A DNA stretch of 64,000 nt from Octopus sinensis. Taxonomy: Eukaryota. The position numbers and the translations under genes were made by a program. Below are positions 1-48,645 of this stretch, piece by piece. The number at the start of each line of letters is the position of its first letter. The first letter of the stretch is position 1. The notes beneath the pieces are model-generated. The model was not told the DNA's origin, did no database searches, and was given only the letters and a program-made list of their open reading frames with translations. The DNA lies in assembly GCF_006345805.1 (NCBI RefSeq), contig NC_043015.1, positions 17,732,001 to 17,796,000 of the forward strand, in the 5' to 3' direction.

Positions 1-2830
1 TTAAAGTTATGGTCATGTTTTAGGGTTAGGGTTTGTGTTGCATTTAGCGTTAGGATTAGTTTTAGAGTTGGGGTTATGGTTATGATTAGGATTAGAGTTA
101 AATTTAGGGTTAGTTTTGTGGTTAGCATTAGGTTTAGTGCTAGGGCTAGACATAGGGTTAGTGTTTGATTTAGCGTTAAGTTTAGGGTTAGATTTAGGGT
201 TAAGGTTAGTGTTAGTACTAAGGTTAGGGTTAGAGTTAGGATTTGGGTTAGGGTTAAGTTTAGGTTTAGCATCAGGATTAGTGTTAGGGTCATGGTTACT
301 TTAAGTGTTACGGCTAGGGTTAGTGTTAGGGTTAGGGTTAGGTTTAGTGTTAGTATTAGGATAAGGGTTATCGTTTGGGTAAGGGTTACATTTAGGGTTA
401 GGCATAGGGCTAGTGTTAGGGTTAGGTTTAGGTTTATGCTTAGTGTTAGTGTTAGGTATAGGATTAGTGCAAGCGATAAGATTAGGGTTAGGTTTAGGCT
501 TAATGCTAGGGTTAGTTTTAGGGTGAGGGTTAGCGTTGGGGTTAGGGTTAGATTTAGGGTTAGAGATAGGGTTAATATTAGGGTTGGCGTTAACATTAGG
601 GTTAGGTTTATGGTTAAGTTGAGAGTGAGGTTTAAGGTAAGTTTTCGGGCAAGTGCGAGAGTTAGGTTTTAGGGTTAGCTTTAGTGTTAGGTTTAGTGTT
701 AGGTTTGGGGTTAGCATTAGGTTTTTGGTTAGGTCTAGTGTTAGGATTAGGTTGAGGGTTAGGAATAGATAGTGGGGTAGGTTTACGGTTAGGTTTAGGG
801 TTAATGTTAGGGTTAGTGTGAGGTGTAGATTTAGGTCTAGGTTTAGGTTAAGTTTATGATTAGGGTTAGGTTTCGTGTGATTGTTAGAGTTAGGGTTAGG
901 GTTGGGGTTAGGACTAGTGTTAGGGTGAGGGATATGGTTTATGGTAGGGTTAGGTTTAAGGTTAGGTTTAGGTATAGTGTTAGGGTTAAGGTTAGGGTTA
1001 ACGTAAGGGTTGGTTTCGGGTAAGGTTTAAGGTTAAGGTGAGGTTTAATGTTAAGGTTTGAGTTCATGGTAGGGTTAGCATTAGTGTTAGGTTTCTTCGT
1101 AGGTTTAGCGTTAGAGTTAGGTTTAGGTTTATGGTTAGGTTTAGTGTTTGGCTTAGGATTTGGGTTAGTTTTAGAGTTAGGTTAAGTGTTAGGATTAGGG
1201 TTAGGTTTAGGGTAGTTTTAAGGTTACTATTACCGTTAGGCTTAGGTTTAAGTTTAGGGTTAGGGCTAGGGTTTGTGTTAGGTTATGTTCAGGGTTATGG
1301 TTATGTTTAGTGTGAGTGTTAGGGTTAGTGTGAGGACAAGGTTAGGGTTAGTTTTATGGTTAGCGTTAGGTTTAGTGTTAGAGTAAGACAGGGCTCGTGT
1401 TTGAGTTAGGGCAACGGTTAGGGTTAGTGCTAATGTTAGGGTTAGAGTTAGGGTTTGGGTTAGGGTTTGGTTTAGGGTTAGGTTGAGGGTTAGTGTTTGG
1501 GTTAGTATTAGGGTTAGTTTTAGGGTTAGGTTTAGGTTTATGGTTAGTGTTAGTGTTAGGGATAGGATTAGTGTAAGCGATGGGATTAGGGTTAGGGTTA
1601 ATGTTAGCTTTACTGTTAGGGTGAGGGTTAGCATTGGGGTTTTAGTTAGGGTTACATTTAGGGTTAGTGATAGTGTTAGTATTAGGGCTGGAGTTAGTAT
1701 TGAGGTTAGGTTTATAGTTAGATTGAGAGTGAAGTTTAAGGTAAGTTTTCAGGTAAGTGTCAGGCTTAAGTTTAGGTTTTAGGGTTAGCTTTATTCTGCT
1801 TGTTCCCTAATTCCCGCCCTTCAAACTTCACAGCTCAGCATCGTCTATACCAACTCGTGCTCCTTATTTCCAAAGTTCAGCGAATTATTTACACTGGCCA
1901 TGCGTTTAGGCTAATGTTTAGTGTTATTGTTAGGATTAAGTTTAGGGTTAAGGTTAGGGTTAGGGTTATAATTAGTGTTAGGGTGAGTGTTAGCATTAGG
2001 GTTAGTGTTAATGTTTGGCTTCAGGTTACGGTTAAGGTTAGTGTTAGGGTTAATTTCTGTATAAGGGTTAGGTTTAGGGCTATATTGATGGTGAGGATTA
2101 GGGTTAGGGTTCTGGTTATGGTCAGGGTTAGGTTTTACGGATAGGATTAGTGTTCGGGTTATGGTTAGTCTTAGGGTTTTGGTTAGATTTAGCGTTAGTG
2201 TTAGCATTAGGGTTAAGATTAGATTTAGGGTTAGTTTTACAGTGAGGTTTATGGTTAGTGTCAGTGTTTGGGTTAGGGTTAGGTTTAGTGTTAGGGTGAG
2301 GTTAGGTTTAATTTTAGGGTTAGTGTTAGGGTTAGGATTAGGGTTAGGATTAGGGTTAGATTTAGCATTAGTGTTAGATTTTAGGGTTAGTGTTAGTGAT
2401 AGGGTGTTATGGTTAGTCTTATGTTTAGGGCAAGGGCTAGGTTTAGCGTGGGATTAGTTTTAGGGGTATGGTGAAGTTTAAGGTTAATGTGAGGTTTATT
2501 GTTAGGGTTAGTGTTAGTGTTGGGGTTCAGTTTAGGTTTATGGTTCAGGCTAAGGTTTAGGGTTAGATTTGTGGTTACAATTACAGTTAGGATCAGGTTT
2601 AGGTGTAGTATCAGGGTTAGGGTTAGGGTTAAGGTTAGGGCTATGGTTAGTGTTAGGATTAGGGTTAGGCTTAGTGTTAGTGTAATTGTTAGGTTGAGGA
2701 TTAGGTTTAGAGTTAGGGATAGGGTTACTGTTAGTGTTCGGATCAGGTTTAGGGTTAGGTTTAGGTTTTAGGGTTAGGATGAATATTAGGGTTAGGGTTA
2801 GTGTTAGTGTTAGGGTTAGGGTATTATTTA

Positions 2831-3050
2831 GGCAGTGAGCTGGCAGAAACGTTAGCACGCCGGGCGAAATGCTTAGCGGTATTTCGTCTGTCGTTACGTT
2901 GTGAGTTCAAATTCTGCCAAGGTCGACTTTGCCTTTCATCCTTTCAGGGTCGATAAATTAAGTACTGGGGTCGATGTAATTGACTTAATACCTATGTCTG
3001 TCCTTGTTTGTCCCCTCTACGTTTAGCCCCTCGTAGGTAATAAAGAAATA
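2831..3050 (+). mobile_element. tRNA-derived SINE inserted into the telomeric-type array, with 12-bp TSD
   Basis: Head GGCAGTGAGCTGGCAGAAACGTTAG (A-box-like) and GAGTTCAAATTC (B-box-like). Body GGTCGACTTTGCCTTTCATCC. A-rich tail TAATAAAGAAATA. Direct repeat GGTATTATTTAG at 2820-2831 and 3051-3062. Confidence 0.9.
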
Positions 3051-6000
3051 GGTATTATTTAGTTTTAGGTTTAGGTTTAGGGTTAGGTTTAGTTTTAGGG
3101 TGAGGTTTGGGTTTAGTGTTAGGGTTTGGTTTAGAGTTAGGTTCAGGTTTAGTGTGTAGGTTATGGTGAGGTTTAGGGTTAAATTTAGAGTTAGTGTTAG
3201 GGTTTATATTTAGGGTTAAGGTCATTGTTATTATCAGGGTTATGATTAGGTTTAGGGTGAGGATCAGGGCTAGGGACAGGGTGTAAGGTTTAGTGTTAGG
3301 GTTAGGTTTAGGATTAGGGTTAGGGTAAAGTTTAGGTTTAGTGTTAGGAGTAGGGTTAGGGTAAAGTTTAGGTTTAGTGTTAAGAGTAGGGTTAGGTTTA
3401 GGGTTAGTGTTAGTGTTAGGGTTGGCTTAGGGTTTAGGTTTAGGTAAAGGTTTAGTTTTAGGGTTATGGTTAAGGTGAGGGTTAGGGTTGGGGTTAGAGT
3501 TAGGGTTACTGTGAGGGTTAGGTTTAGGCTTATATTTAATGTTAGGGTTAAGGTTAGGACTAGCGTAAACATTAGTTTCAGGATTAAGGTTAGGGTTAGC
3601 ATTATGGTTAGTGTTAGGGTAAGGGTTAGCATAAGGGTTAGTGCTAGTGTTAGGTTTAGGGCTACAGTTAAGGTTAGTGTTAGAGTTAGGTTGAGGGTTA
3701 GTTTTCATGTTAGGGTTAGATTTATGGTTATATTGATTGTGATGTTTAGATTTAGGCTATGGTTATGGTTACGGTTAGTGTTAGTGTTAGGGTAAGGGTT
3801 AGTGTCAGGGTTAGCGTTAGGTTTAGGTTTATGGTTAGGGTTTGTGTTAGTGTTACAGTCCGTGTCTGTGTAAGGATTAGGTTTAGGGTTAGGTTTAATT
3901 TTATGGTGATGGTTTTGGTTAGGGTTAGGTTTAGGTTTAGGGTTGAGGATTAGGTTGAAGGTCAAGTTTTGGGTTAGGTTGGGATTGGGTTTATGGTTAG
4001 TGTTAGGTTTTAAGGTCAGGGTTAGTTTTAGAGTTAGGTTTAGGGTTAGCGTTATGGTTTTGGTTAGGTTTAGCATTAGATTAGGGTTAGGATTAGTTTT
4101 ATAGTAGGTTTACTGTAAGGTTTAGGGATAGGTTTAGGGTTGGCATTAGCGTTAGGGGTAGTCTAAAGGTTAGGGTTAGAGTTAGATTAACTGTATGCGT
4201 TAGGTTTAGTGTTAGGGCTAGGTTTAGTGTTAGGGTTAGGGTTAGGCTTAGTTTTATGGTTAGGGTTAGTGTTAGGGCCAAGTTTAGGTTAGGTTCAGTT
4301 TTAAGGTTAGGTTTAGGGTTAGGGTTAGGTTTAGGGCATGGGGTAGTGATAGGGTTGGTTAGGTTTAAGGTTAGGGTTAGGTTTAGGGTTAGGTTTAGGG
4401 TTAGGGTAAGGGTTAGGTTTAGGGTAAGTGTTAGTGTTAGGTTTAGGGTTAGGGTGAAGGTTAGGTATAGAGTTAGTGTTGGGGTTAGTGCTAGTTTTTC
4501 GTTTAGTGTTAAGGTTAGGTTTAGGGTTAATGTTAGAGATAGTGTTAGGGTTATGGTTAGAGTTAGGGATAGGTATTGGGTTAGGTATTGGGTTAAGTTA
4601 GCATTAGGTTTAAGGTTAGGGTGGGGGTTAGTGTGAGTATAAGTTTTAGGCTTATGTTTAGGTTTTGCTGTAGGCTTTGCTTTCAGGTTAGGGTTTGGGG
4701 TTAGTTTTAGGGTTAGGTTTTGGGTTAGGGTAAGTGTAAGGGTTAGGGTTAGCATTAGTGTGTGGGTTATGTTTAGGATTAGGGTTAGGTTTAAGGTTAG
4801 GTTTAGGGATAGAATTTGTGATAAGGTTAGGGTTAGGGTTAGGTTTATGTTTAGGGTTTGGGTGAGAGTTATGGTGAGGGTTAGGTTTAGGGTTAGTGTT
4901 AGGATTATATTTAGGTTTAGGGTTAATGTTTGGGTAAGGGTTAGCATTAGTGTTAGGTTTAGGGTTAGTGTTAGGGTCAGTTTTAGTTTTAGGGTTAGTG
5001 TTAGTTTTAGTTTTAGTGTTAGGGTTAGGTTTATTGTGAGGTTTAGGTTTAGGGTTATGGTTAGTTTCAGGTTTAGGGTGAGGGTTAGCATTAGGGGCTA
5101 GGGTTTATGGTTAGGGATAGGTTTGGATTAGGCTTAGGGTTATTTTGAGGGTTAGTTTGAGGATTAGGGTTAGGTTTAGTGTGAGGTTTAGGTTTAGGGT
5201 TATGATTAGTTTCAGGATTAGTGTTAGGGTTCGGGTTATGTTCAGGGTTAGGGTTAGTGTTAATGGGAGAGCTAGTGTTAAGGTTAGGTTTAGGGTTTGG
5301 GTTAGGGTTAAAGTTATCGTTAGATTTGGGTTTATGTTTAGTGTTAGTTTTCGTGTTATGGTTAGTGTAAGTGTTATGTTTTGGGTTAGGTTTAGGGTTA
5401 GGGGTAGGTGTAGTGTTAGGTTTAGGATTAGGGTTAACATTTTATTTAGTGTTAGGGTTAGTGTTTGAGTGAAGGTTAATGTTAGGGTTAGGGTGTAGAG
5501 TTTTGGTTTAGCATTACGGTTAGATTTAGGTTTAGGGTTAATTTTAGGTTTAGTTTTAACTTAGGGTTAGTGTTATAATAGGGTTAGGGTTAATGTTAGT
5601 GTTAGTGTTAGTGTCAGAGTGAGGGTTAGGGTTACTGGTAGGGTTACAGTTAGGGTTAGGCTTAGGTTTATGGTTAGTGTTGGGGTTTATGTTAGGATTA
5701 GTGTAAGCGTTAGTTTTATGGGTTATGGTTAGGTTTTGTGTTAGGGTTAGTGTTAAGTTTAGGGTAAGGGTTAGGGTTAGTGCTAGAATTAGTTTTACAG
5801 TTAGTTTTTGTGTTCAGGTTAGGTTTAGGGTGAGATTGAGGGTGAGGTTTATGGTTAGGTTTTGGGTTAGTGTTAGGGTTAGTGTTAGTGTTTCAGTTAG
5901 GTTTAGTGTAATGTTTAGAATTAGGGTTAGGATTAGGTTTAGTGTTAGTTTTAGGGTGGGGTGTAGAATTTGTGCCAGTGTTTGGGTTAGAGTTAGGTTT

Positions 6001-9000
6001 ATTGTTAGGGTTAGGGCTAGGGTTAGGGTTACTGTTACAGTCAATGTTAGGTTTAGTGTTACTGTTATTGTTAGTTTTATTAGAATTAGCATTAGGGTTG
6101 GTGTTAGGTTTAGGGTTTTGTTTAGGTTTTCAGTTAGGGTTACAATCAGGTCTATGGTTAGGATTAGGATTAGTGTTCCTGTTATGGTTAGTGTTAGGTT
6201 TAGGGGTAAGGTGTGCATGAGGGTTGTCCTCAGGGTTAAGATAAGTGATAGGGTTAGAATCAGGTTTCGTTTTAGGATCAGTGTCAAGTTTAGCGTTAAG
6301 ATTATATTTTGGTTTAGGGTTAGGCATAGGTTTAGGGTTAGGGTTAGTGTTACAGCTATGGCTAGGGTTAAGTCTAGGGATAGGATTAGGATTAGTGTTA
6401 GTTTATTGTTAGGTTTAGGGTGAAGGTATGAGTTAGGTTTGACATTAGGGTTAGTGTTAGTGTCAGTGTTAGGCTTAGTGCTCGGGCTAAGTTTAAGATT
6501 ATGGTTAGGATTAGGGTTAGGTTTAGTGTTAGAGTTAGGTTTTGGTTTGGTGTTACATTTAGTTTTTGAGTTTATGTTAGGGTTAGTGTTAGATTTACAT
6601 GTTTTAGGTTTACATTTATAGTTAGCATTAGAGTTATGTGTAGGGTTAGGTTTGAGGTTAGTGTTCCTGTTACGGCTAGTGTTAGGTTTAGCGTTTTGTT
6701 TAGGGTGAAGGTATGGGTTATGTTTGACATTACAATTAGGGTAAGGGATTGGGTTAGGAATAGGTTTTGGATTAGTGTCAGTGTTTGGGTTGGGGTTAGG
6801 GCTAGTTTTAGGTTTAGGTTTATGTTTAGTGTTAGGGTTGGGGTTACTGTTAGGTTTAGTGATACTGTTAGTGCTAGGTTTAGTGTTAGGGTTAGTGTTA
6901 GGTTTAGGGTTTTGTTTTGGTTTGCAGTTAGAATTAGGGTTAGTGTCTCTGTTATGGTTAGTGTTAGATTTAGTGTTAGGTTTAGTGTTGACGTTAGGGT
7001 TAGGGTAAGCAATAGGGTTAGGTTTAGATTTTGTGTTAGGGTCAGTGTGTGGGTTAGGGTTAGGATTAGGGGTTAGGTTTAGGGTGAAGCCAAGGGTTAA
7101 GACTAGGGTTATTGTTCCTGTTACTCTTGGGTTTAATGTTAGGTTTAGGGTTCGGGTTAAGTCTAGGACTAGGACTTGGTTTCATATTATGTTTAGGTTT
7201 AGGGTTAGGTTTAAGGTTAGGGTTAGTTTAGGGTTAATTTTAGGGTTCGATTTAAGGTTAGGGTTAGGTTTAGTGTTAGAGCTAGGGTAGGTTTAGGGTT
7301 AGTGTAAGGTTTAGGGTTAAGTTTATTGTTAGCTTTAGGCTTAGGATTGTGATTAGAGTTAGAGTGAGGGTTAGGGTTAGGGCTAGGGTTAGGTTTAGGT
7401 TTAATGTTATGGTTAGGGTGAGGTTTAGTGTTACTGTTAGTGTAAGGTTTAATGTTAGAGTTAGTGTTATTGTTAGTATTAAGGTTTTATTTAGGTTTGC
7501 GCTTAGGGTTAGGGTTATGTCTAGGGTTAGGGTTATATCTAGGGTTAGGATTAGGGTTAGTATTCCTGTTACGGTTAGTGTTAGGTTTAGTCTTCGGTTC
7601 AGGGTTAAGGTGTGCATTAGGGATGACACTAGGGCTAGGATTATGTTTAGGGTCAATGTTTGGGTTAGGGTTAGCATCACGGTTAGGGCTAGCTTTAGAG
7701 TTAGGGTTAGGGTTAAGGTTAGGATTGGGGTTAGTGTTTGGGTTTAGATTAGGGTTAGGTTTAGGGTTAGATGGGTTAGGATTAGTTTTATGGTTACGTT
7801 TAGTGCCAGTTTTAGGGTTAGGGTTGGGGTGAGGGTCAAGTTTAAGGTTAGGGTTAGGTTTAGTGTTACTGTTAGCATAAGGTTTAGTGTTAGGGTTAGT
7901 ACTGGGATTAGTGTTAGGTTTTGTTTAGGTTTGCCATTAGGGTTAGGTTTAGGGTTAAGTCTAGTGTTAGGATTAGGGTTAGTGTTTGTGTTAGTGTTAT
8001 ATTTATTGTTTGATTTTAGGTTTGACATTATGGTTATGATAAGGAATAGGGTTAGTGTTAGTTTGGGGTTAGGTTAAGGGCTAGGTTTCGTGTTAGGGTA
8101 AGTGTCCAGTTTAGGTTTAGGGTTAGTGTTAGGTTTAGGGTTAGGGCTATGGCTAGGGTTTGGGCTTGGGTTAGGATTAGGATTAGGGTTAGTCTTCCTG
8201 TCACAGTTAGTGTTAGGTTTAGTGTTAGGTTTAGGGATAAGGTGTGGGTTAGTGTTGATGTTAGGTTTAGAGATGGGGTTAGAGTTAAGGTTAGGCTTAG
8301 GTTCAGGGCTTGGACTAGGGCTAGGTTTAGTGTTATGATTAGGGTTGTTTCGTTTTAGGGTTAGGTTTAGGGTTAGATTTAGGTTTAGTGTTAGAGTTAG
8401 GTTTAGGGTTAGGATTAGAGTTAGTTTTAGTGTTTGGTTGAGGGTTAGGGTTAGGTTTAATGTTATGGATAGGGTAGGTTTAGGTTTAGGTTTAAGGTTA
8501 TGTTTAGTGTTAGTTTTAGGGTTAGGGTGAGGGTTAAGTTTAGGGTTAGGGTTAGGTTTAGTATTACTGTAAGTGTAAGTTTTAGTGTTAGAGTTAGTGC
8601 TAGGTTTGTGTTAAGTTTAAGTTTTATTTAGGTTTGTGATTAGGGTTAGCGTTAAGTCTAGGTTTAGGATTAGGGTTATTGTTCCTGTTATTGTTAATTA
8701 TGTTTAGGTATTAGGTTTAGTGTTATGTTTAGGGTTAAGGTGTGCATTAGGGTTGATGTTAGGCGTAGTATAAGGGATAGGTTAGTGTTAGGTTTTGGGT
8801 TAGGATCAGTGTTAGGGTTATGGTTAGGATAAGGTTTAGATTGAGGGTTAGAGTTACTCATACAATGAATGTTAGGTTTAGTGTTGCTGTTAGTGTTCAG
8901 TTTAGTGTTAGAGTTAAGTTTAGTGATTTGTGCAGGTTTGTGGTTAAGATTAGGGTTAGAGGTAAGTCTAGGGTTAGGATTAGGGCTAGCATTCCTGTTA

Positions 9001-9276
9001 TGGTTAGTGTTAGGTATAGTGTATGCATTAGGCTTGACTTTAGTGTTAGGGTAACGAATAGGGTTAGTGTCAGGTTTCAGTTTAGTGTCAGTGTTAGGGT
9101 TATGGGTTGTGCTAGGGTTAGAGTTAATGTTAGGGTCGTGTTAAGTTAATGTTTTTTTTTAGGTTTGTGGTTAGATTTAGGGTTAGGGTTATGGTTACAG
9201 TAAGGTTTAGGCTTATTGTTAGGATTAGGGTTAGTATTAGGTTTAATGTTACTGTTACGATTAGTGTTAGGTTTAG

Positions 9277-11049
9277 GGTTTTGTTTTAGTTAGTGTTAAG
9301 TGTAGAGTTAGGATTAGGGTTAGTGCTCCTGATATGGTTAGTATTAGGTTTAATGTTAGGTTTAGGATTAAGGTGTTTATTAGGGTTAGGGTAAGGTATA
9401 GGATTAGGGTTAGGTTTTATGTTAGGGTCAGTATTAGTTTTACGGTTATATGTAGGGTTAGGGTTATTGTCATGGTTAATGTTAGGGCTATGGTTGGTAT
9501 TAGCATTAGAGTTAGTGTTAGGGTTAGTGTTAATGTTAGAGTTAAGTTTAAGGTTAGGGTTAGTTTTAGTGTTAAGTCTAGAGTTAGAATTAGGCTTAGT
9601 GTTCGTATTACGCTTAGTGTTAGGTTTAGCATTTGGTTTAGGGTTAAGGTGTGGTTTAAGGTTAACGTTATGTTTTGGTAAGGGTTAGGGTTAGGGTTAG
9701 AGCTAGGGTTAGAGTTAGAGTTAGGATTAGGGTTAGGATTACAGTTAGGTTTAGGTTTAGTGTTAGTTTTAGGGTTTAGGTGTGGGTTAGGGTTGACATT
9801 AGGTTTAGGGTAAGTGATTGGGTTAGAGTTAGGGTTAGGGTTAGGTTCAGGGTTAAGTTTTGAGTTAGGTTTAGGATTAGGGTTAGGGTGAGGTTTAGTG
9901 TTAGTTTTAGGGTTAGGTTTAGAGTGAAGGTTAGTGTTAGCGTTAGGTTTAGTGTTATTGTTAGTGTAAGTTTTACTGTTAGAGTTAGTGTTAGGATTAG
10001 TGTTAGGTTTAGGGTTTGGTTTAGGTTTGCAGTTATGGTTAATGTTAGGGTTAAGGCTAGGGTTAGTGTTCCTGTTATATCTAGTGTTAGGTTTAAGGTT
10101 AAGAGTTAAGTCTATAGTTAGGATTAGGTTTAGTGTTCATGTTACAGTTAGTGTTAGGTTTAGGTTTTGTTTTAGTTAGTGTTAAGTGTAGAGTTAGGAT
10201 TAGGGTTAGTGCTCCTGATATGGTTAGTATTAGGTTTAATGTTAGGTTTAGGATTAAGGTGTTTATTAGGGTTAGGGTAAGGTATAGGATTAGGGTTAGG
10301 TTTTATGTTAGGGTCAGTATTAGTTTTACGGTTATATGTAGGGTTAGGGTTATTGTCATGGTTAATGTTAGGGCTATGGTTGGTATTAGCATTAGAGTTA
10401 GTGTTAGGGTTAGTGTTAATGTTAGAGTTAAGTTTAAGGTTAGGGTTAGTTTTAGTGTTAAGTCTAGAGTTAGAATTAGGCTTAGTGTTCGTATTACGCT
10501 TAGTGTTAGGTTTAGCATTTGGTTTAGGGTTAAGGTGTGGTTTAAGGTTAACGTTATGTTTTGGTAAGGGTTAGGGTTAGGGTTAGAGCTAGGGTTAGAG
10601 TTAGAGTTAGGATTAGGGTTAGGATTACAGTTAGGTTTAGGTTTAGTGTTAGTTTTAGGGTTTAGGTGTGGGTTAGGGTTGACATTAGGTTTAGGGTAAG
10701 TGATTGGGTTAGAGTTAGGGTTAGGGTTAGGTTCAGGGTTAAGTTTTGAGTTAGGTTTAGGATTAGGGTTAGGGTGAGGTTTAGTGTTAGTTTTAGGGTT
10801 AGGTTTAGAGTGAAGGTTAGTGTTAGCGTTAGGTTTAGTGTTATTGTTAGTGTAAGTTTTACTGTTAGAGTTAGTGTTAGGATTAGTGTTAGGTTTAGGG
10901 TTTGGTTTAGGTTTGCAGTTATGGTTAATGTTAGGGTTAAGGCTAGGGTTAGTGTTCCTGTTATATCTAGTGTTAGGTTTAAGGTTAAGAGTTAAGTCTA
11001 TAGTTAGGATTAGGTTTAGTGTTCATGTTACAGTTAGTGTTAGGTTTAG
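9277..11049 (+). repeat. Apparently perfect 886-bp tandem duplication inside the array
   Basis: Identical ORF translations offset by exactly 886 (9417/10303, 9419/10305, 9888/10774, 9988/10874). Identity read by eye from 9277/10163 to 10163/11049. Confidence 0.93.
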
Positions 11050-13469
11050 TGTTTGGTTTAGGGTTAATGTGTGGGTTATGGTTGATGTTACAATGAGGGA
11101 AGGGGTAGGGTTAGGTTTCATGTTCAGGGTCAGTGTTAGGAAGAGGGTTAGTGTTGTGTTTAGTTTTAGGTTTAGGTTTAGGGTTACTGTTAGTGTTCGG
11201 TTTAGTGTTAGAGTTTGTGTTAGCTTTAGTGTCGGGTTTAGGTATTTGTTTATGTTTGTGGTTAGGGTTAGGGTTAGAGCTAGTGTTCCTGTTATGGTTA
11301 GTGTTAGGTTTAGTGTTAAGTTTAGGTTTAAGGCAAGCGTTAGGTTTGATATTAGGGTTTGGGGAAGTGATAAATTTAGTGTTACATTTTGGGTTAGAGT
11401 CAGTTTTAGGTTTAGCTTAAGAGTGAGGGTTAGGGCTAGGGTTAGAGTTAGGTCTGGGTTTGGGTTTAGGTTTAGGGTTAGTTTTAGTGTTAGGGCTATG
11501 CCTAGGGTTACGTTTAAGTTTAGGGTTAGGTTTAGATTTAGTGTTAGGGTTAGAGTCAGTGTTAGGGTTAGTGTTTGGGTTAGGGTTAGTGTAAGGGTTA
11601 GGCTTATAAGTGTAAAGTGTAGGGTAAGAATCACAGTTAGTGTTCATATTACGGTTAGTGTTACGGTGAGTTTGGTTATATTTAGTGTTAAGTCGTGGGT
11701 AAGAATTGACGTTATGATTAGGGTAAGAGATTGGGTTAGTGTTAGGTTTTGGGTTAGGGTAAGTGTTCGGGTTAAGTTTAGGGTTAGGTCTAGGTTTAGG
11801 GTTAGGGTTTCTGTTATGGTTAATGTTAGCATTAGTGTTACTGTTAGGATTATTGTTAGAGTTAGTTTGAGGGTTAGTGTTTGGTTTACAGATTTGTTTA
11901 GGTTTGTGGTTAGGGTTAGGGTCAAGGTTAGAGTTAAGTCAAGGGTTTAAGATTAGGGCTAGATGGATCATGTTAGGTTCAGTGTTAGGTTTAGGGTTAA
12001 GGCGTGCGTTAGGTTTGACGTTAGGGTTAGGATAAGTGATATTTTTAGTGTTAGTTTTTGGGTTAGGGTCAGTGTTTAGGGTTAGGGCTACGGTTAGTTA
12101 TGGTTAGGTTTAGGGTTAGGTTTAGTGTTAGGGTTAGCCTTGGGTTAGGTTTAGTTTTACAGTTAGGTTTAGGTTTAGTGTTACTGTTATTTTTAGGTTT
12201 AGTGTTAGAGTTAATGTTAGGGTTATGTTTTTAGGTTTGCAGTTATGGTTAGGGTTATGTTTAGTATTATGGTGTGGGTAAGGGTTGACGTTATGATTAG
12301 GGTAAGGGATTAGGTTAGGGTTAGGTTTTGGGTTAGGGTCAGTGTCAGTTTAGGGTTAAGATTAGGTTTAGGGTTTGGGTTACTGTTTTGGTTAATGTTA
12401 TGTTTAGTGTTACTTTTAGAATTAGGTTTAGGGTTTTGTTTATTTAGGTTTACAGTTAGGATTAGATAAAGTGTTAGTGTTAGGTTTAGGGTTGAAGTTA
12501 GGGTTAGGATGAGGGATAGGGTCAGGGTTAGGTTTCGTGTTAGGGTCAGTGTCAGGTTTAGGGTTAGGTTTAGTGTTAGGCTTAGGCTTAGGGTTATGGC
12601 TAGGGTTAGGGTTAAGTATAGTGTTAGGATTAGGCTTAGTGTTAGGTTTAGGGTTAGGGTGTGGGTTGGGGTTGATGTTAGGGTTTGGGTAAGTAATAGT
12701 GTTAGAGTTAGGGTTAGGGCTAGGGAAGGACTGGGTTTAGTGTTACGATTAGGGTTAGGTTTAGAGTTAGGTCTAGTGTTAGGGATAGGTTTAGTGTTAG
12801 TGTTAGGTTTAGGTTTAATTTTAGAGTTAGTGTTACTGTTAATGTAAGTTTTAGTGTTAGAGTTAGGGTTAGTGTTAGGTTTAGGGTTAGGTTTAGTGTT
12901 AGTGTTAGGGTTAAGGTTAGTGTTAAGTTTAGGCTTAGTGTTAGGTTTAGGGTTAGCATTTGTGTTAGGGTTAGGGTTAAGTCTAGGTTTAGGATTAGGG
13001 TTAGTGTTAGGTTTAGGGTTGAAGTTAGGGTTAGGATGAGGGATAGGGTCAGGGTTAGGTTTCGTGTTAGGGTCAGTGTGAGGGTTAGTGTTAGGTTTAG
13101 GGTTAGGTTTAGGGTTAGGGTGTGGGTTGGGGTTGATGTTAGGGTTTGGGTAAGTAATAGTGTTAGAGTTAGGGTTAGTGTTAGGTTTAGGGCTTGGGTT
13201 AGTGTTAGTGTTAGGGTTAGGGTTAGGTTAGTGTTAGGTTTAGGGTTAGGTTTAGGGTTAGGTTTAGTGTTAGAGTTAGGGTTAGGGCTAGGGAAGGACT
13301 GGGTTAGTGTTACGATTAGGGTTAGGTTTAGTGTTAGTGTTAGGTTTAGGGCTTGGGTTAGTGTTAGTGTTAGGTTTAGGGTTAGCATTTGTGTTAGGGT
13401 TAGGGTAACGGTTAGGCTTTTAAGGTTTAGTGTTAGAGTTAATGTTAGGTGCAGTGTTATGTTTGCAAG

Positions 13470-13945
13470 GATTTTTACTGCAGAAATGATAATGTATTTA
13501 ATGCCAAAATAAACAGAATTATGGAAATTTTATCTGTTTGGAACATTCTCTTTGAAATAACATCAGAGGCTCTCAAATGTAAGTGTGAGGGTTGTTGCCC
13601 AGGTTTGTCAATGACTGCAGCTAAGGTAGCAGGTATTTTTGCCAAGTGTAAGGACTTCCATAACCATAAATGGGGAATAACCAAATGCTTTCCTATAATC
13701 AAACCTTAATGTCACAAGGTTTCTTTGATGTTTTCTTACTTCAGACAGTACAACTTTATTTATCAAAAGTTGTTTGGCACATACACACACTCCCTTCTTT
13801 CCATCTGCTTAGTCATCAGTTTGTCTGTCTGTATATGTCATTTTTCAGTTTTATTTCAAGATTTCTTGCTGATAGAGAAAGAGCCTGTTTCTAACTTATA
13901 TCCAAAGCTCCTTCACTGGAATTTCAACATCAACAGAGTAATTTT
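13470..13945 (-). mobile_element. R4/Dong-like (RLE-type) non-LTR retrotransposon RT fragment, degenerate
   Basis: Minus-strand translations AKQLLINKVVLSEVRKHQRNLVTLRFDYRKAF and MFQTDKISIILFILALNTLSFL resemble the RT core motifs DxxKAF and QGDxLSxxLFxLALNPLS of R4-clade elements. Confidence 0.7.
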
Positions 13946-13950
13946 GTATG

Positions 13951-15651
13951 TCATCGTCATCATCGTTTAACGTCTGTTTTCCATGCTGGCATGGGTTGGA
14001 TGGTTTGACTGAGGAGTGGCAAGCCAGTTGGCTGCACCAGGCTCCAGTCTGATTTGTCAAGGTCTCTACAGCTGGATGCTCTTCCTAACGCCAACCACTC
14101 TGAGAGTGTAGTGGGTACTTTTTACATACCACCGGTATGGGAGCCAGTCAGGCAGCACTGGCATCAACCACGTTCAGATGGTGCTTTTTATGTGCCATGG
14201 GGGGGGGGGGCCACTGGTAGCCAGTCAGGTGACACTGGCATCGACCCATACTTGAATGGTGCTTATTATGTGCCACCAGCATAGGTGTCAGTCAGGCAGC
14301 ACTGGCATTGGCCACAACTACGATTTCCATTTCACTTAACTCAATAAGGTCTTCTCAAACACGGCATATCATCCGATGATTCAAGGGTACTTTTAAATGG
14401 ACTGGCTATGCGACACTCGTATCAGCCATGGCTGTGATCTCACTTTACTTGCCAGGTCATTGGCCACGATTCAATTTCACTTGACTCAACAGGTCTTTTC
14501 AAGCACAGCATATCACCTGACAATTCAAGGGTACTTTTGAATGGGTTGGTTATGTGTCACTGGTATCTGCCACAGCTTCTCAATCACAGCATATCTCCAA
14601 AGGTCTCAATCTCTTGTCATTGCCTCTGTGACGCCCAATGTTCAAAGGTTTTGCTTCACCAACTCATCCCATGTCTTCCTGGGTCTCCCTCTTCCATGGG
14701 TTCCTTTCATTGTTAGGGTGTGACACTTCTTCACACAGTTCTCCGCATCCATATGCAGCACATGACATACCAGTGCAGTTATCTCACTCGCACACTACAT
14801 CTGATGCTTTTTATGTCCAGCATTTCTCTCAGGGCACTTACACTTTGTTGTGTAGGCACAGACATTACACATCCAGCGGATCATACAAGCTTTATTTCTT
14901 TCAAGCCTACGCATGTCCTCAACAGCTATGTAGCATGGATGTTTGCACACATGCATCATACAGTCTACCTTTCACTCTGAGCGAGAGGCCCTTTGTCACC
15001 AGCAGAGGTAAGAGCTTTCTGAATTTTGCCCAGGCTATTCTTATTCTAGTGGCAACACTCTCAGAGTATCCACCCCAACTACAGACTTGGTCACCTAGGT
15101 AGCAGAGACTATCGACTACTTCTATTTTCTTCCCCTGGCATGTGATGGAATCTGTTTTCTGTACATCTTTGGTATTTATTGACCCTGTGCATCTGCCACA
15201 CACAAAAACTATCTTCCTGGTTAACCTTCCTTTGATATTGCTGTACATCTTACATGTCCATAGAATATAGAAAAGGCAATCTATGCCTTTTCTACAGATT
15301 GAGCAAGGCCATCTACCTGAAGGGGTTTGTAATTTGTCCACCTTCTAGGACTTCGGTTTTTGCTAGATTGACTCTATGGCTCTTTGATTCTAGACCTTGC
15401 TTCCACTCTTGAAATTTCATCTCTAGTTCTGGTAGTGACTCAGCTATTAGAGCAAGGTCATCAGCATAGAGGAGCTCCCAAGGGCAGCCTGTCTTGAATT
15501 CCTCTATTATTGCATGGAGGACTATAATGAATAAGAGGACTGATCCTTGGTGAACCCCTACTTCTACCCAGAAATCTTCACTATACTCGTTGCCAACCCT
15601 CACCTTACTGGCAGTATCTCTGTACAGGGCTTGTACAGCTCTAAGCAACCA
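13951..15651 (-). mobile_element. 5'-truncated RTE-clade LINE (RT C-half, 3'UTR, (ATG)n tail)
   Basis: ORFs 15313-15648 (GVHQGSVL...CPWELLYADDLAL) and 14919-15341 (WPCSICRKG...LSLRVKGRLYDACV). Tail (reverse complement) CATCGTCATCATCGTTTAACG at 13951, matching the other RTE copies in the window. Confidence 0.93.
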
Positions 15652-15654
15652 TGT

Positions 15655-17235
15655 ATGTATATGTGCAGATTTGTATGTTTTGCTTTATTTATGTATTCTC
15701 ATGCATATAGCTGCATGCCCAGACATGCTCATATATACTTAAATGACAAACTTCTGGAAAGTTTTACAGTTTTTTGAAGTTCCAGTGATGGCTTGGATCT
15801 GCAGTCTTTGAATTAGCTTTCTCCTTTCTGGTTTTGAGAAGCCTAATTTCTCAAGACTAGTACTTAGGCAGTGTATTACATACCCAGGGCCCCAATGATT
15901 ACAGGTATAAACCTGAACTTGTAATCTGGGTAGAGTAGTTGTAGATTCCTCAATAGTTCAGCATAGGTATTTTCTCTTTCAATGATCTTTATGTTAACAT
16001 TCACTAGACGGTTGATTTCCACAACTGTACAGTTTCTCTTCTCAACCTCAAATTACTATGTCGGGTCTATTATGTTTACATTTTATTGAGGTTTTCACTG
16101 GGACATTCCACCAGTACTCCATACTGTAGGTTCTTATTTCTTTGGCCATGAGGTTATCCTTCTGATGGATCTCATTATACAGTGTCCTAGCTACAACATC
16201 ATGTCTCATTGGCAGATAATACCATAATGACATTTTCAGACAACTGCTTATGATGTGGGTAATATCTTCAGTGTTAACTCCACAAAGTCTGCATCAGTTA
16301 TCACATTTTGCTGCTTTTCCTGCATCTCTGTCCCTTTTGTGCATTAGATATTTGGTTGATATTTCTTATTCCTGGATTGCAAACGCATACCCTCCAAAGA
16401 GGGAGTTAGTAATCTGGTTGTTAGTCCATGATAGACTGCTTTAATGATCAATGTTACTATTATCCCGTAGCTTTCTACTAACATATCCATGCATGGTCTT
16501 CTGCAGATATACCCTTATCCTTTCATCTGATATGTTGCGGTAGAGTTGTGTGACTTCTTTGGGTATGTATTTAAGGTTATCAGACAAGGAATGCTGCTTT
16601 CCAAGTCTCATGTATGCAGACTTGGTCAAGAGGTGCACTTCGATACTTTGTGGTTGAAAGATGTTGCCGAAGGGATATGATACGACATTCAAAGACAGTT
16701 TGGATTGATGTTAAGCCTCTTCCCCCTTGTTTTCGTTTTAGGTAGAGGCGGTCTACGTCACTGATGATGTGGAAATTATGTGTGTTAGTATCTTCCGGGT
16801 TTTCACATCAATGGCTCGGATCTCATCAAGCGTCCAATCAAGTAACCCAAATGTTGGTATGAAGTACTGGCACAGCAAACACATTGTGGGCCACAGTTTT
16901 ATTGAATGTTGAGAGTTCCGAGGTCCATATTTTCTTTATTCGGCTATAATATTCTTTAGTGACATGCGTTTTGTAACAAGTGTCATCGTAAGGTATGTTT
17001 TCATCTACCCCAAGGTACCTGTAACATTCCTCGTCAGATACAGAGGAAACGGGTTATTGATGGAGATGTCAAGTTTCTTTTATAGTTTTCCCTCTTTTCA
17101 CAGCCATATAACAATATTAATCCTGACCAAACTCCAACCCTATATTCTTTGAGAATGTTGTAACCAGGTCAAGGCTCTTTTTCATCTTATGCATATAGTT
17201 TCGAGTCATCCACAATGAAAGCGTGAGTAGTGTAG
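15655..17235 (-). mobile_element. 5'-truncated R4/Dong-like LINE: RT catalytic motif to restriction-like endonuclease (RLE), decayed
   Basis: THAFIVDDSKLYA (YxDD-type motif, ~17190-17230), then FSKNIGLEFG, KEYYSRIKKIWTSELS, RHDVVARTLY...WWNVPVKTSIKCKHNRPDIVI (RLE RHD and PD motifs) and PVIIGALG. Natural stop near 15740. Both ends lie in TACA/CATA-type microsatellite. Confidence 0.82.
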
Positions 17236-17984
17236 TGTAATAAATGTATGTATGTATATATGTATGCATGCATGCGTGTATGCATGTACATACGTAAGCA
17301 TGTGGTGGGGACAGAGAAAGAAAGAGTGAAGTCTATGAAAGTGAAGCTCAATGAAGGAAAGCAAAACATTATTCGAGCTCACGAATTATCTCCCCTCTGT
17401 CAGTAAAATCAGACGCATCTCTTTGCTTGTTATTGCGCCACTACACCAAATTTTAAAAAATAACTTTTCTTAAAAAAATAACTTTTTGAATATGTATATA
17501 TTAATAGGAAATAAGTATAATAAAAACGCTGAATAATGAATGGCATCATTAAAATAAAACGACTGAATGATGAATGGATATGTTAGCATGATAGTCCATT
17601 AGACAAATAAGCTACACGATTTGATTATTGAAATAGGTATACGGTAAACGCAAAGTAATATTCACGCAACACATGGAACTTTGGTGAGCATAAAATGCAA
17701 AGCAACTATTTTCTGAAATGATTAAGTTAATAGAATTAGAATTAATCTTATCTTAGTTGTTAGAAGATACTAGATTTTTCTAAAATAAACGGTAAAGCTG
17801 AATTTCCTTGGGCGTTGACAATCGAAAACTGTTGCTGATAAAAAATACTATATAGTGCCAGTTCGACAACATCAGGTTTAGTTTATAATAATACATTCTT
17901 GATAGTTGATAGATTGGTATTATCTATCTCTTGGTATAAATTTATAATAAATATCCTTGTAAACTTGTGTGATAGCACCCTAGA

Positions 17985-18265
17985 AGAGGGGACTATTTTT
18001 TGAAGCGGTTGTTTACTACGTTAATCGTTGGCGAAAAGAAGCAGGTTAGGTTGGTGAGTGTCGAAGAACACAAGATGATTCGTAGGTCACCATGAAAAAG
18101 GAATGTTTCATCCAGCGACAATTGATTCACTCTTGGCAAACATAATAGATTTTTCTCCTTGTTTAGAATATTCAAGTGTCGGCAAATATTGACATTGTAA
18201 CCGACGAATTCCTTTTAAAAGCGTAAACCACGAAAAGGAAACAAGACAGCACTATATCTCACTCG
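17985..18265 (+). promoter_or_regulatory. CpG-enriched putative CUL3 promoter / upstream non-coding exon
   Basis: Locally high CpG density against an AT-rich background. GTGAGT donor at 18054. Acceptor-like CTGCAG (~18538) and TTTAAG (~18590) just upstream of the CUL3 ATG. Confidence 0.4.
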
Positions 18266-18601
18266 AACACAAACACATTTTATCCTTTATCTGGAATTAT
18301 ATTACATATTCCTAAAAATTGCCAACTCTTTTTCTCAATAGGCATTCTTTGAATGGAAAAAAACATTTTTCATCAAGTCTTTTTGCATGACTTGAGTATT
18401 TAAACATATACACATCCATAAAAAATATTACACCTTTAATGTATGTATATACATGTATAACAAATAGACATAATACATTTCTTTCTTAAACATATTAAAG
18501 GTGATCGCGACTTGGTTCAATTTTTATACTCTCTGCAGCCTTATTTTGCTGATAATTTCATTAAATATCTGTTTTGACTTGCAACTTTAAGGACATTCGC
18601 G

Positions 18602-18661
18602 ATGAGTGGCGGTTTAAGAACCCATAAGAGAGACACGAAGATGCGCATTAGGGCCTTTCCT
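18602..18661 (+). CDS. CUL3: Cullin-3 coding exon 1 (MSGGLRTHKRDTKMRIRAFP)
   Basis: The DTKMRIRAFP N-terminal motif is the CUL3 signature. The exon ends in phase 0 at a GTAAGT donor (18662). Confidence 0.95.
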
Positions 18662-26839: not shown

Positions 26840-27121
<282 letters not shown>

Positions 27122-34464: not shown

Positions 34465-34564
34465 NNNNNNNNNNNNNNNNNNNNNNNNNNNNNNNNNNNN
34501 NNNNNNNNNNNNNNNNNNNNNNNNNNNNNNNNNNNNNNNNNNNNNNNNNNNNNNNNNNNNNNNN
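34465..34564. other. Assembly gap (exactly 100 N; true length probably unknown)
   Basis: Run of 100 N. An RTE tail plus (TA)n lies on the left and a CR1 endonuclease cut mid-motif on the right. Confidence 0.99.
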
Positions 34565-35284: not shown

Positions 35285-36793
35285 GAGGCAAGTGAAAATC
35301 AAATCAAAACAAATCAAAATAGATGAACATCAATGGAATTTGTATCTTTGTGGTACCAGTGCCGGTGGCACACAAGCAAACCATCCGGACGTGGCCGTAG
35401 CCAGTACCGCATCGACTAGCCTCCGTGCTGTGGCACTAACAAACACCATCCGACGTGGCCGTCGCCAGCTCATCTGGCACCTGTGTCGGTGACACATAAA
35501 AACACCATCCGAAGACCCGGGCAGACTAGTCAGGCCATAACCCGTGGCCCCTACCTGGACGTAGTCAGTCCACCTGTGCATACCTTCCTTCTTGTGACAC
35601 TTGTGAAGACCTGTTGAGGCAAGTGAAAATCAAATCAAAACAAATCAAAATTGATGAACATCAATGGAATTTGTATCTTTGTGGTACCAGTGCCGGTAGC
35701 ACACAAGAAAACCATCCGAACGTGGCCGTAGCCAGTACCGCATCGACTGGCCATCGTGCTGTTGGCACATAACAAACGCCATCCAATCGTGGCTGTTCGC
35801 CAGCCTCATCTGGCACCTGTGTCAGTGGCACATAAAAACACCATCCGAAGACCCGGCAAGACTAGTCAGGTCATAACCTGTGGCCCCTACCTGGGACGTA
35901 GTCAGTCCACCTGTGCATACCTTCATTCTTGCGACACTTGTGAAGACCTGTTGAGGCAAGTGAAAATCAAAACAAATCAAAATAGATGAACATCAATGGA
36001 ATTTGTATTTTTGTGGTACCAGTGCCGGTGGCACACAAGAAAACCATCCGAACATGGCCGTAGCCAGTACCGCATCAACTGGCCTCCGTGCTGTGGGCAC
36101 GTAACAAACACCATCCGATCATGGCCGTTCGCCAGCCTCATGTGGCACCTGTGTCGGTGGCACATAAAAACACCATCCGAAGACCTGGCAAGACTAGTCA
36201 GGCCATAACCCGTGGCCCCTACCTGGGACGTAGTCAGTCCACCTGTGCATACCTTCCTTCTTGTGACTTGTGAAGACCTGTTGAGGCAAGTGAAAATCAA
36301 AAAACAATCAAAATAGATGAACATCAATGGAATTTGTATCTCTGTGGTACCAGTGCCGGTGGCACACAAGAAAACCATCCGAACGTGGCCGTAGCCAGTA
36401 CCGCATCGACTGGCCTCCGTGCTGTGGGCACGTAACAAACACCATTCGATCGTGGCCGTTCGCCAGCCTCATCTGGCACCTGTGTCGGTGGCACATACAA
36501 ACACCATCCGAGCGTGGCCGTCTGCCAGCCTGTCTGGCACCTGTGTCGGTGGCACATAAAAACACCATCCAAGCGTGGTCGTTCGCCAGCCTCGTCTGGC
36601 ACCTGTGTCGGTGGCACATAAAATCACCCACTACACTCTCGGAGTGGTTGGCGTTAGGAAGGGCATCCAGCTGTAGAAACACTGCCAGATCTGACTGGCC
36701 TGGTGCAGCCTTCGGGCTCCCCAGACCCCAGTTGAACCGTCCAACCCATGCTAGCATGGAAAGCGGACGTTAAATGATGATGATGATGATGAT
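35285..36793 (+). repeat. Tandem array (~330-bp unit, 3 units plus a terminal unit) of RTE 3' ends
   Basis: GAGGCAAGTGAAAATC recurs at 35285, 35616, 35953 and 36283. Each unit includes GAAGACCCGGCAAGACTAG, the end of the RTE ORF as at ~55148. The last unit runs into the canonical (ATG)n tail. Confidence 0.9.
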
Positions 36794-47264: not shown

Positions 47265-47297
47265 GACAATAATATAAATTATATATATTATGTATAT

Positions 47298-47329
<32 letters not shown>

Positions 47330-47348
47330 TATTTATATATAATAAATA

Positions 47349-47384
<36 letters not shown>

Positions 47385-48135: not shown

Positions 48136-48176
<41 letters not shown>

Positions 48177-48215
48177 TATATATATATATATTATATTATA
48201 TCTAATAATAAAATG

Positions 48216-48254
<39 letters not shown>

Positions 48255-48272
48255 TTATATAGAATAAATATA

Positions 48273-48316
<44 letters not shown>

Positions 48317-48330
48317 ATATATATAATATA

Positions 48331-48368
<38 letters not shown>

Positions 48369-48608: not shown

Positions 48609-48645
<37 letters not shown>

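What the first reader, a model, noticed from the sequence alone, without database searches (positions are those of the whole stretch)
1..13462. At least 13.5 kb of telomere-type array pointing the wrong way, ~5 kb upstream of CUL3
Seen: the G-rich strand reads 5'->3' toward the genes. Established: at a true chromosome end the G strand runs toward the terminus, so a left end would show CCCTAA on +. Inference: this is a large interstitial or inverted subtelomeric block. It could be the relic of an end-to-end fusion or inversion, or a satellite family evolved from telomeric DNA. It is not telomerase healing of the 13.46-kb junction. A housekeeping gene start lies only ~5 kb away, which invites position effects or TERRA-like transcription.
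Basis: partly seen in the sequence, partly recalled or inferred. Interest (0 to 1): 0.7.

Follow-up and report, generated by a model that had tools for sequence, protein, structure and literature searches.

The report
Degenerate interstitial telomere-like satellite beside octopus CUL3
The first 13.5 kb of the window is a real, heavily mutated block of telomere-type TTAGGG repeats lying deep inside an octopus chromosome next to the CUL3 gene. This kind of interstitial telomere-like satellite is already known from many animals, so it is a modest curiosity, not a misplaced chromosome end.

Summary
Window 1-13462 is one uninterrupted-orientation array of about 2,200 TTAGGG-like hexamers, with the G-rich strand on + pointing at CUL3. 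The CUL3 start codon is at 18602, 5.14 kb away.

The array is not telomere-grade. It is 77% identical to (TTAGGG)n, evenly along its length. Only 17% of units are canonical, and no run exceeds two perfect units.

It is genuine genomic DNA. A SINE-like element with a perfect 12-bp target-site duplication sits inside it, and it carries segmental duplications.

The CUL3 region lies tens of Mb from scaffold ends in O. sinensis, O. bimaculoides and Argonauta. "Pointing the wrong way" is therefore moot, because this is an interstitial block. Argonauta and Acanthosepion have no such array within 10 kb upstream of CUL3, so it is either lineage-specific or was lost in those two lineages.

Best reading: a heterochromatic-ITS-like satellite that grew from a telomeric seed by unequal exchange and then decayed by point mutation. 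A fusion or inversion relic and a contig chimera are not excluded, because the left flank and the reads are out of reach. Position effects and TERRA-like transcription were not tested.

This is a new member of a known kind, of modest interest. The one odd feature is the significant avoidance of identical neighbouring units.

The parts
1..13462 (+). Degenerate TTAGGG-like hexamer array, G-rich strand on +. It is cut off by the window start, so 13.46 kb is a minimum length.
   Evidence: TRF finds 20-13416, period 6, 2,228 copies. A wrap-around alignment to (TTAGGG)n gives 76-77% identity, 73-82% in every kb, with 159 indels. Of the units, 378 are TTAGGG, 235 TTAGGT and 231 TTAGTG, with 368 distinct unit types. 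The longest perfect stretch is 20 nt.
1791..1905 (.). Non-array insert of about 115 bp that contains C. Its origin is unknown.
   Evidence: It shows as a low-identity, C-rich stretch and was read directly. It has no match in the window or in five cephalopod loci.
2820..3062 (+). SINE-like retroelement at 2832-3050 (tRNA-like head with a GAGTTCAAATTC box, A-rich tail). It is flanked by a perfect 12-bp target-site duplication, GGTATTATTTAG, at 2820-2831 and 3051-3062.
   Evidence: The sequence was read directly. It is 86.5% identical to a copy in O. sinensis locus L005 and 81% to one in L003.
9277..11049 (+). Exact tandem duplication with an 886-bp period (9277-10162 equals 10163-11048). Similarity of 99.3% extends back to 9230.
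   Evidence: An identical 887-bp string occurs at offset 886. Self-BLAST gives 9230-10163 against 10117-11049 at 99.25%. It is either a very recent unequal exchange or an assembly artefact.
12473..13462 (+). Gene-proximal edge of the array. It is a mosaic of local duplications, and 13000-13380 re-uses pieces of 12473-12980.
   Evidence: Self-BLAST pairs are 89-98% identical at offsets 527, 461, 568, 306 and 159. This kb has the highest identity to consensus, 0.82.
13463..17775 (.). Transposon-rich spacer that is not conserved. It holds an interspersed repeat at 13947-14445 and a truncated retrotransposon with a reverse-transcriptase fragment at 14568-15660 (minus strand).
   Evidence: The intervals match unrelated Octopus loci. 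The ORF at 15313-15648 (-) hits RVT_1 at E=2.3e-6, below Pfam's cut-off. There is no orthologous alignment to Argonauta upstream of 17776.
17776..18601 (+). Conserved CUL3 promoter and 5' UTR region.
   Evidence: Window 17776-18243 and 18342-18871 align to Argonauta L001 9059-9553 and 9729-10272 at 74-77%.
18602..18661 (+). CUL3 coding exon 1 (20 codons, followed by a GTAAGT donor).
   Evidence: The residues are identical to the N-termini of P0121 and P0122.
26876..27076 (+). CUL3 coding exon 2. The 3' boundary is uncertain by about 3 nt.
   Evidence: It hits Pfam Cullin at E=9.3e-15 and is 93% identical in DNA to Argonauta exon 2.
34465..34564 (.). Scaffold gap of 100 N. The array and CUL3 exons 1-2 lie on one gap-free contig to its left.

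Best explanation
The block is an old, non-coding interstitial telomere-like satellite of the heterochromatic-ITS type, lying in an octopus chromosome arm. It is neither a chromosome end nor a freshly internalised one.

The inferred history has three steps. First, a stretch of (TTAGGG)n became internal. This happened either by telomerase or repair-mediated insertion at a break, or by capture of an end. Second, the stretch was enlarged in place by unequal exchange, slippage and segmental duplication, which also spread the variant units TTAGGT and TTAGTG. Third, it decayed by AT-biased point substitution and picked up at least one SINE.

Today it has no tract that could act as a telomere seed, because the longest perfect stretch is 20 nt. 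It still carries about 280 YTAGGGTTR half-sites that telomere-repeat-binding proteins could in principle recognise.

Shown: the anatomy, orientation, degeneracy, insertions, duplications and position relative to CUL3. Shown indirectly: the interstitial location. Inferred: the origin from a telomeric seed, the mode of growth, and the lack of function.
For: - Uniform degeneracy with no gradient: 73-82% identity per kb.
- Single orientation over at least 13.46 kb, with no CCCTAA block.
- Position-specific excess of G->T at unit positions 5 and 6: 25% each, against 10% G->A and only 9% G->T at position 4. This points to spread of two variant units, not independent decay or 5'-G oxidation.
- Growth by duplication: an exact 886-bp tandem duplication and a mosaic of 89-98% identical local duplications at the gene-proximal edge.
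- The array predates a retrotransposition event, so it is real resident DNA: a SINE-like insert with a perfect 12-bp target-site duplication.
- CUL3 neighbourhoods are far from scaffold ends in three octopod assemblies.
- No array within 10 kb upstream of CUL3 in Argonauta hians or Acanthosepion pharaonis, and none in about 280 kb of other cephalopod loci.
[quoted passage not shown] Interstitial TTAGGG arrays are reported on all chromosomes of a slug (PMC12506671).
Against: - The left end of the array is outside the window, so its true size, its left flank and any switch to CCCTAA are unknown.
- The chromosomal position of this very window could not be read. The interstitial location rests on CUL3 and PPM1L coordinates in other assemblies.
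- CUL3 gene models are broken in all three Octopus assemblies, so this region is hard to assemble.
- There is no higher-order repeat period up to 60 units, which is unusual for a satellite homogenised by unequal exchange.
- Identical units are under-represented at lags 1 and 2 (z = -3.3 each), and three perfect units in a row never occur, against 11 expected (0 of 2,000 shuffles). Simple decay-plus-duplication does not predict this.
- Heterochromatin state and protein binding are untested.
Confidence: 0.68

Rival explanations
1. The block is a relic of an ancestral chromosome end. A telomere or subtelomere of a chromosome whose body lay to the left was internalised by an end-to-break fusion or an inversion during octopod karyotype evolution, and then degenerated.
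For: The orientation is what a right-hand end of a left-lying chromosome would show. The neighbourhood has been rearranged in Octopus. CUL3 and PPM1L are adjacent and co-oriented in Argonauta, but 2.4 Mb apart on opposite strands in O. sinensis. Large ITS blocks are commonly read as rearrangement scars (PMC6410037).
Against: There is no CCCTAA partner block in the window. There is no gradient from degenerate to pure repeats. The inferred CUL3/PPM1L inversion breakpoint lies downstream of CUL3, not at the array. Argonauta, also an octopod, has no array within 10 kb upstream of CUL3. Conserved DNA upstream of CUL3 ends about 4.3 kb before the array, so no breakpoint can be placed at 13462.
Confidence: 0.15
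2. The junction is an assembly artefact. A genuine subtelomeric or satellite array from elsewhere was wrongly joined at about 13462 to the contig carrying the CUL3 5' end, or the array was inflated by false duplications.
For: The exact 886-bp tandem duplication inside otherwise diverged sequence looks like a possible false duplication. CUL3 exons 3 onward are absent from the 37 kb after exon 2, and a 100-N gap follows. CUL3 models are truncated or chimeric in O. bimaculoides, O. sinensis and O. vulgaris. A junction-spanning ORF was not found in any independent assembly, but that look-up is an exact-match test and is weak.
Against: There is no gap at the junction, and the hexamer pattern fades into unique sequence instead of stopping abruptly. 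Indels are rare at 1.2% and a SINE with a target-site duplication is embedded, so the array itself is not read noise. Flipping or moving the contig would not change the array-to-CUL3 orientation.
Confidence: 0.1
3. The array is not telomere-derived. It would be a hexamer micro- or minisatellite, or a transposon tail, that converged on a TTAGGG-like consensus.
For: Only 17% of units are canonical, and 368 unit types occur.
Against: The consensus is exactly TTAGGG, the motif determined by FISH for an octopus telomere (Adachi et al. 2014, as cited in PMC13218726 and PMC6160780). The TTA core is 87-90% conserved. No transposon body adjoins the array. The nearest reverse-transcriptase fragment is 1.1 kb away and is an ordinary interspersed copy.
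Confidence: 0.04

Closest known systems
Heterochromatic interstitial telomeric sequences (het-ITS) of vertebrates, such as the Chinese hamster pericentromeric blocks
   Same: A large block of head-to-tail telomere-like hexamers away from the chromosome end. It is enlarged by duplication and unequal exchange and behaves as satellite DNA (PMC6410037).
   Different: Only 13.5 kb or more is visible here, whereas het-ITS span hundreds of kb to Mb. Centromere proximity and heterochromatin are unknown. This array is much more degenerate, at 77% identity with no run of three perfect units. It lies 5 kb from an essential gene.
Subtelomeric degenerate TTAGGG-like blocks (subtelomeric ITS) of humans and yeast
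   Same: Degenerate telomere-like repeats in a single orientation next to unique DNA.
   Different: Those lie within subtelomeres and point toward the nearby terminus. Here the CUL3 neighbourhood is tens of Mb from scaffold ends in three octopod assemblies, and the G strand points into the gene-bearing DNA.
Fusion ITS, such as human 2q13-q14
   Same: Degenerate telomeric repeats inside a chromosome that might mark an old rearrangement.
   Different: The defining head-to-head (TTAGGG)n-(CCCTAA)n arrangement is absent from the visible 13.46 kb. The human relic is under 1 kb.
Interstitial and subtelomeric TTAGGG arrays reported on all chromosomes of the slug Deroceras laeve (PMC12506671)
   Same: A mollusc with the TTAGGG telomere motif that also has tandem arrays of it at internal sites.
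   Different: That report is at the level of repeat-density tracks. No unit-level structure is available to compare.

Membership tests
Functional terminal telomere | The G-rich strand runs 5'->3' away from unique DNA toward the terminus. | tested here: not met
   The G-rich strand is on + and unique DNA follows at its 3' side. This holds whichever way the contig is placed.
Functional terminal telomere | Long tract of near-perfect canonical repeats. | tested here: not met
   17% of units are canonical, the longest perfect stretch is 20 nt, and there is no run of three units.
Functional terminal telomere | Lies at the physical end of the chromosome. | tested here: inconclusive
   The window's own coordinates are unknown. 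The CUL3 3' part lies at 17.07 of 53.9 Mb in O. sinensis and CUL3 at 23.2 of 35.7 Mb in Argonauta. PPM1L lies at 27.8 of 55.1 Mb on the O. bimaculoides chromosome that carries CUL3.
Fusion ITS (head-to-head) | Adjacent (TTAGGG)n and (CCCTAA)n blocks in inverted orientation. | tested here: inconclusive
   There is none in 1-13462: one CCCTAA and no inverted self-match. The left end of the array is outside the window.
Short ITS (repair-inserted) | A few to some tens of mostly exact hexamers inserted at a break in otherwise collinear orthologous DNA. | tested here: not met
   The array has about 2,200 units at 77% identity. An empty orthologous site could not be shown, because conservation with Argonauta ends at 17776.
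Subtelomeric ITS | Located in a subtelomere, with the same polarity as the nearby telomere. | tested here: not met
   The locus is interstitial in other octopod assemblies, and the polarity points toward the gene-bearing interior. The location evidence is indirect.
Heterochromatic ITS / telomere-like satellite | A large block of tandem telomere-like repeats at an internal site. | tested here: met
   At least 13.46 kb in a single orientation, at a locus that is internal by synteny.
Heterochromatic ITS / telomere-like satellite | Evidence of in-place amplification (unequal exchange or duplication). | tested here: met
   An 886-bp exact tandem duplication and a mosaic of local duplications at 12473-13462. 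The 886-bp duplication could be an assembly artefact.
Heterochromatic ITS / telomere-like satellite | Centromeric or pericentromeric position and constitutive heterochromatin. | not testable with these tools
   This needs FISH or C-banding, a centromere map, or H3K9me3 and methylation data.

The most novel reading that the evidence does not exclude
The array is kept scrambled, not left to decay passively. Runs of identical or canonical hexamers are actively removed or selected against, for example because three or more TTAGGG in a row would seed telomere addition, form G-quadruplexes or cause fragility next to an essential gene. The many isolated TAGGGTT half-sites would be retained as a binding platform or chromatin boundary, possibly at an octopod evolutionary breakpoint.
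Probability: 0.07. Interest if true: 0.6.

Novelty: new member of a known kind. Interest (0 to 1): 0.3.

Why it matters
It gives a base-level description of a large interstitial telomere-like block in a cephalopod. For cephalopods, the papers I could search offered only one FISH determination of the telomere motif.

Practically, it warns that TTAGGG-motif-guided scaffolding and telomere-to-telomere checks in cephalopod assemblies can be misled by internal arrays. One cuttlefish assembly already used TTAGGG as the telomere motif for scaffolding.

Biologically, it is a candidate marker for rearrangement history around CUL3 in Octopus. It is also a test case for how long telomere-like arrays persist. 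The lack of any run of three perfect units is the only feature that ordinary decay-plus-duplication does not explain.

Tried and rejected
- **Higher-order repeat.** I looked at base-level autocorrelation to lag 60 and unit-level identity to lag 60 units. There is no period beyond 6 bp.
- **Oxidative G->T decay.** Rejected as the main cause. The excess is at unit positions 5 and 6, not at the 5' G (position 4) that oxidation favours (the expectation comes from general knowledge).
- **Read noise over a pure telomere.** Rejected. There are only 159 indels in 13.4 kb, against 23% substitutions, and a SINE with a target-site duplication is embedded.
- **Coding potential.** ORFs of up to 358 aa in the array are low-complexity by-products of the 6-bp period.
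- **RNA families.** There is no Rfam hit in the window at gathering thresholds.
- **Orthologous Octopus DNA.** The O. bimaculoides and O. vulgaris CUL3-containing gene models span more than 100 kb, so no DNA was returned. The O. sinensis model covers only the 3' part. Exact-match look-ups of a junction-spanning ORF and of the exon-2 ORF found nothing.
- **Species of the window.** Not settled. The read-through after exon 2 matches the O. bimaculoides RefSeq model. However, the single 100-N gap and the best transposon identities (up to 97%) resemble the O. sinensis loci more than the gap-ridden O. bimaculoides locus. The extra 5' exon of the O. vulgaris model is not in the window.
- **Telomere-attached retroelement.** The nearby reverse-transcriptase fragment was considered and rejected. 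It is a truncated ordinary interspersed copy 1.1 kb away, with another repeat in between.
- **Literature.** Searches found no description of octopus interstitial telomeric arrays.


Full report
**Observation**

The first 13.46 kb of the window is a tandem array of TTAGGG-like hexamers.
- Tandem Repeats Finder reports one array at 20-13416: period 6, 2,228 copies, consensus TTAGGG, 62% matches between neighbours and 2% indels. Direct reading shows the pattern from base 1 to about 13462, where it fades into unique sequence without a gap.
- TTAGGG occurs 386 times and CCCTAA once in the array, against 12 and 4 in the remaining 50.5 kb.
- TTAGGGTTAGGG with up to one mismatch gives 395 matches where dinucleotide shuffles give 1.05.
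- GC skew is +0.65 to +0.87 through the array and near zero afterwards.
- Self-comparison finds no inverted segment.

**The gene**

- The sequence shows ATG at 18602, 20 codons and a GTAAGT donor.
- Exon 2 (26876 to about 27076) hits Pfam Cullin at E=9.3e-15.
- The 87 N-terminal residues are identical to cullin-3 of Octopus bimaculoides (XP_052830865.1) and Argonauta hians.
- The array end is 5,140 bp from the start codon.
- About 830 bp upstream of the ATG is conserved with Argonauta at 74-77%.
- The 4.3 kb between that conserved stretch and the array consists of interspersed repeats, including a truncated reverse-transcriptase fragment.
- No further CUL3 exon lies in 27-64 kb. A 100-N gap sits at 34465-34564.

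**Anatomy of the array**

- A wrap-around alignment to (TTAGGG)n gives 76-77% identity, between 73% and 82% in every kilobase. There is no gradient toward either side. There are only 159 indels.
- Unit positions T1, T2 and A3 are 87-90% conserved, G4 is 76%, and G5 and G6 are 61% each. At G5 and G6 the replacement is T in 25% of units and A in 10%. At G4, T and A are about equal at 9-10%.
- The commonest units are TTAGGG (378), TTAGGT (235) and TTAGTG (231), among 368 distinct types. They occur at similar frequency all along the array.
- The position-specific T excess fits the spread of two variant units better than independent decay. It also fits poorly with oxidation, which from general knowledge favours the 5' G.
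- There is no higher-order period, in bases to lag 60 or in units to lag 60.

**An unexplained feature**

Identical units avoid each other.
- Identity between units at lags 1 and 2 is 0.042 against a baseline of 0.059, z = -3.3 each.
- Three canonical units in a row never occur, although 11 are expected. None of 2,000 unit shuffles gave a count as low.
- The longest stretch in perfect register is 20 nt.
- Canonical G-quadruplex motifs are not significantly depleted.
- About 280 YTAGGGTTR sites remain.

Simple decay of a pure array predicts randomly placed survivors, and slippage predicts clustering. Neither predicts avoidance. I record this as unexplained. Loss of pure runs by deletion is the simplest guess.

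**Signs of history**

1. A 219-bp SINE-like element (2832-3050) has a tRNA-type head and an A-rich tail. It is flanked by a perfect 12-bp target-site duplication, GGTATTATTTAG. It is 86.5% and 81% identical to copies in two unrelated O. sinensis loci. The array therefore existed as resident chromosomal DNA before a retrotransposition event. It is not sequencing noise.
2. A 115-bp insert of unknown origin lies at 1791-1905.
3. An 886-bp segment is present as an exact tandem duplicate (9277-10162 and 10163-11048). This is either a very recent unequal exchange or a false duplication.
4. The last kilobase before the junction is a mosaic of 89-98% identical local duplications.
5. Repeat insertions are fewer than in the flank. 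The array has 1-2 in 13.5 kb, against 21 intervals in 50.4 kb of flank. At flank density about 5.6 would be expected. The Poisson probability of seeing 1 or fewer is roughly 0.02, and of seeing 2 or fewer roughly 0.08 (my arithmetic). This is a modest deficit.

**Where it sits**

- In O. sinensis, the 3' part of CUL3 lies at 17.07-17.10 Mb (+) of a 53.9 Mb chromosome.
- In Argonauta hians, CUL3 lies at 23.24-23.29 Mb of a 35.7 Mb scaffold.
- In O. bimaculoides, CUL3 is on the 55.1 Mb chromosome CM046619.1. PPM1L on that chromosome lies at 27.75-27.83 Mb.

The locus is thus tens of Mb from any scaffold end, so the array is interstitial. Its direction is then neither right nor wrong.

Within one gap-free contig the G strand runs into the unique DNA, and turning the contig around does not change that. 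Only a chimeric join at 13462 would.

**Conservation**

- Ten kb upstream of CUL3 contains no telomere-like array in Argonauta, where an LTR retrotransposon lies instead, or in Acanthosepion pharaonis.
- None occurs in about 280 kb of five cephalopod loci.

The array is therefore either specific to the window's lineage or was lost in those two lineages. The orthologous flank of other Octopus species could not be fetched, because the gene models exceed the 100-kb limit.

The neighbourhood has been rearranged. CUL3 and PPM1L are adjacent and co-oriented in Argonauta, but 2.4 Mb apart on opposite strands in O. sinensis. The simplest inversion that explains this has its breakpoint downstream of CUL3, not at the array.

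**Interpretation**

The best-supported reading is a telomere-derived interstitial satellite, closest to the heterochromatic ITS class. [quoted passage not shown] Molluscan precedent exists in a slug genome (PMC12506671). TTAGGG is the only experimentally determined cephalopod telomere motif (Adachi et al. 2014, cited in PMC13218726 and PMC6160780).

- The steps "telomeric seed", "growth in place" and "no present telomere function" are inferences from anatomy.
It does not hold for addition onto the opposite side of a break followed by rejoining.
- A fusion or inversion relic (about 0.15) and a contig chimera (about 0.1) remain open, because the left flank and the reads are unavailable.
- A non-telomeric origin is unlikely (about 0.04).
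- Nothing here bears on position effects or TERRA-like RNA.

**Verdict**

The block is a new member of a known kind. Interest is modest at 0.3. The avoidance of identical neighbouring units is the only feature that might repay a wider survey.

Noticed in passing
window 2820-3062: A SINE-like retroelement (2832-3050) with a perfect 12-bp target-site duplication, GGTATTATTTAG, is inserted in the array. Related copies occur in O. sinensis loci L005 24455-24676 (86.5%) and L003 13329-13461 (81%).
   Followed up: yes
window 1791-1905: A C-containing insert of about 115 bp interrupts the array. It has no match in the window or in five cephalopod loci, and its origin is unknown.
   Followed up: partly
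window 9277-11049: An 886-bp stretch of the array is duplicated in tandem with 100% identity, inside sequence whose other parts are at most about 85-90% alike. It is either a very recent unequal exchange or a false duplication from assembly.
   Followed up: partly
window 1-13462 (unit level): Identical hexamer units are under-represented at lags 1 and 2 (z = -3.3). Three canonical units never occur in a row, against 11 expected. No explanation was tested successfully.
   Followed up: partly
window 27077-64000; proteins P0121, P0124, P0140: CUL3 exons 3 onward are absent from the 37 kb after exon 2. The public CUL3 models are defective in three Octopus assemblies. The O. bimaculoides model lacks residues of about 88-197 and reads into the intron. 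The O. sinensis model is a 278-aa C-terminal piece. The O. vulgaris model fuses CUL3 exons 1-2 to PPM1L. The locus seems hard to assemble or annotate.
   Followed up: partly
L001 (Argonauta), L003 and L005 (O. sinensis), L004 (O. bimaculoides): CUL3 and PPM1L are 9.6 kb apart on the same strand in Argonauta, but 2.4 Mb apart on opposite strands in O. sinensis. ANAPC11 lies next to the CUL3 3' end there. This suggests an inversion in the Octopus lineage or an assembly difference.
   Followed up: partly
window 35285-36628 and 55337-55637: There is a 331-bp tandem repeat (3.7 copies, 92% matches). There are also arrays of a 61-62-bp unit (GTGCCGGTGGCAC...CCATCC...) that resemble tandemised pieces of an interspersed repeat also found in the O. 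sinensis loci.
   Followed up: no
window 47272-47686 and 48097-48874: Very long impure (AT)n microsatellites drive GC content down to 9.7% in one kilobase.
   Followed up: no
L001 1231-4971 (minus strand): In Argonauta the 10 kb upstream of CUL3 holds a GC-rich LTR-type retrotransposon with gag-, protease-, RT- and integrase-like ORFs. Repeated ends lie at about 957-1318 and 5497-5790.
   Followed up: no
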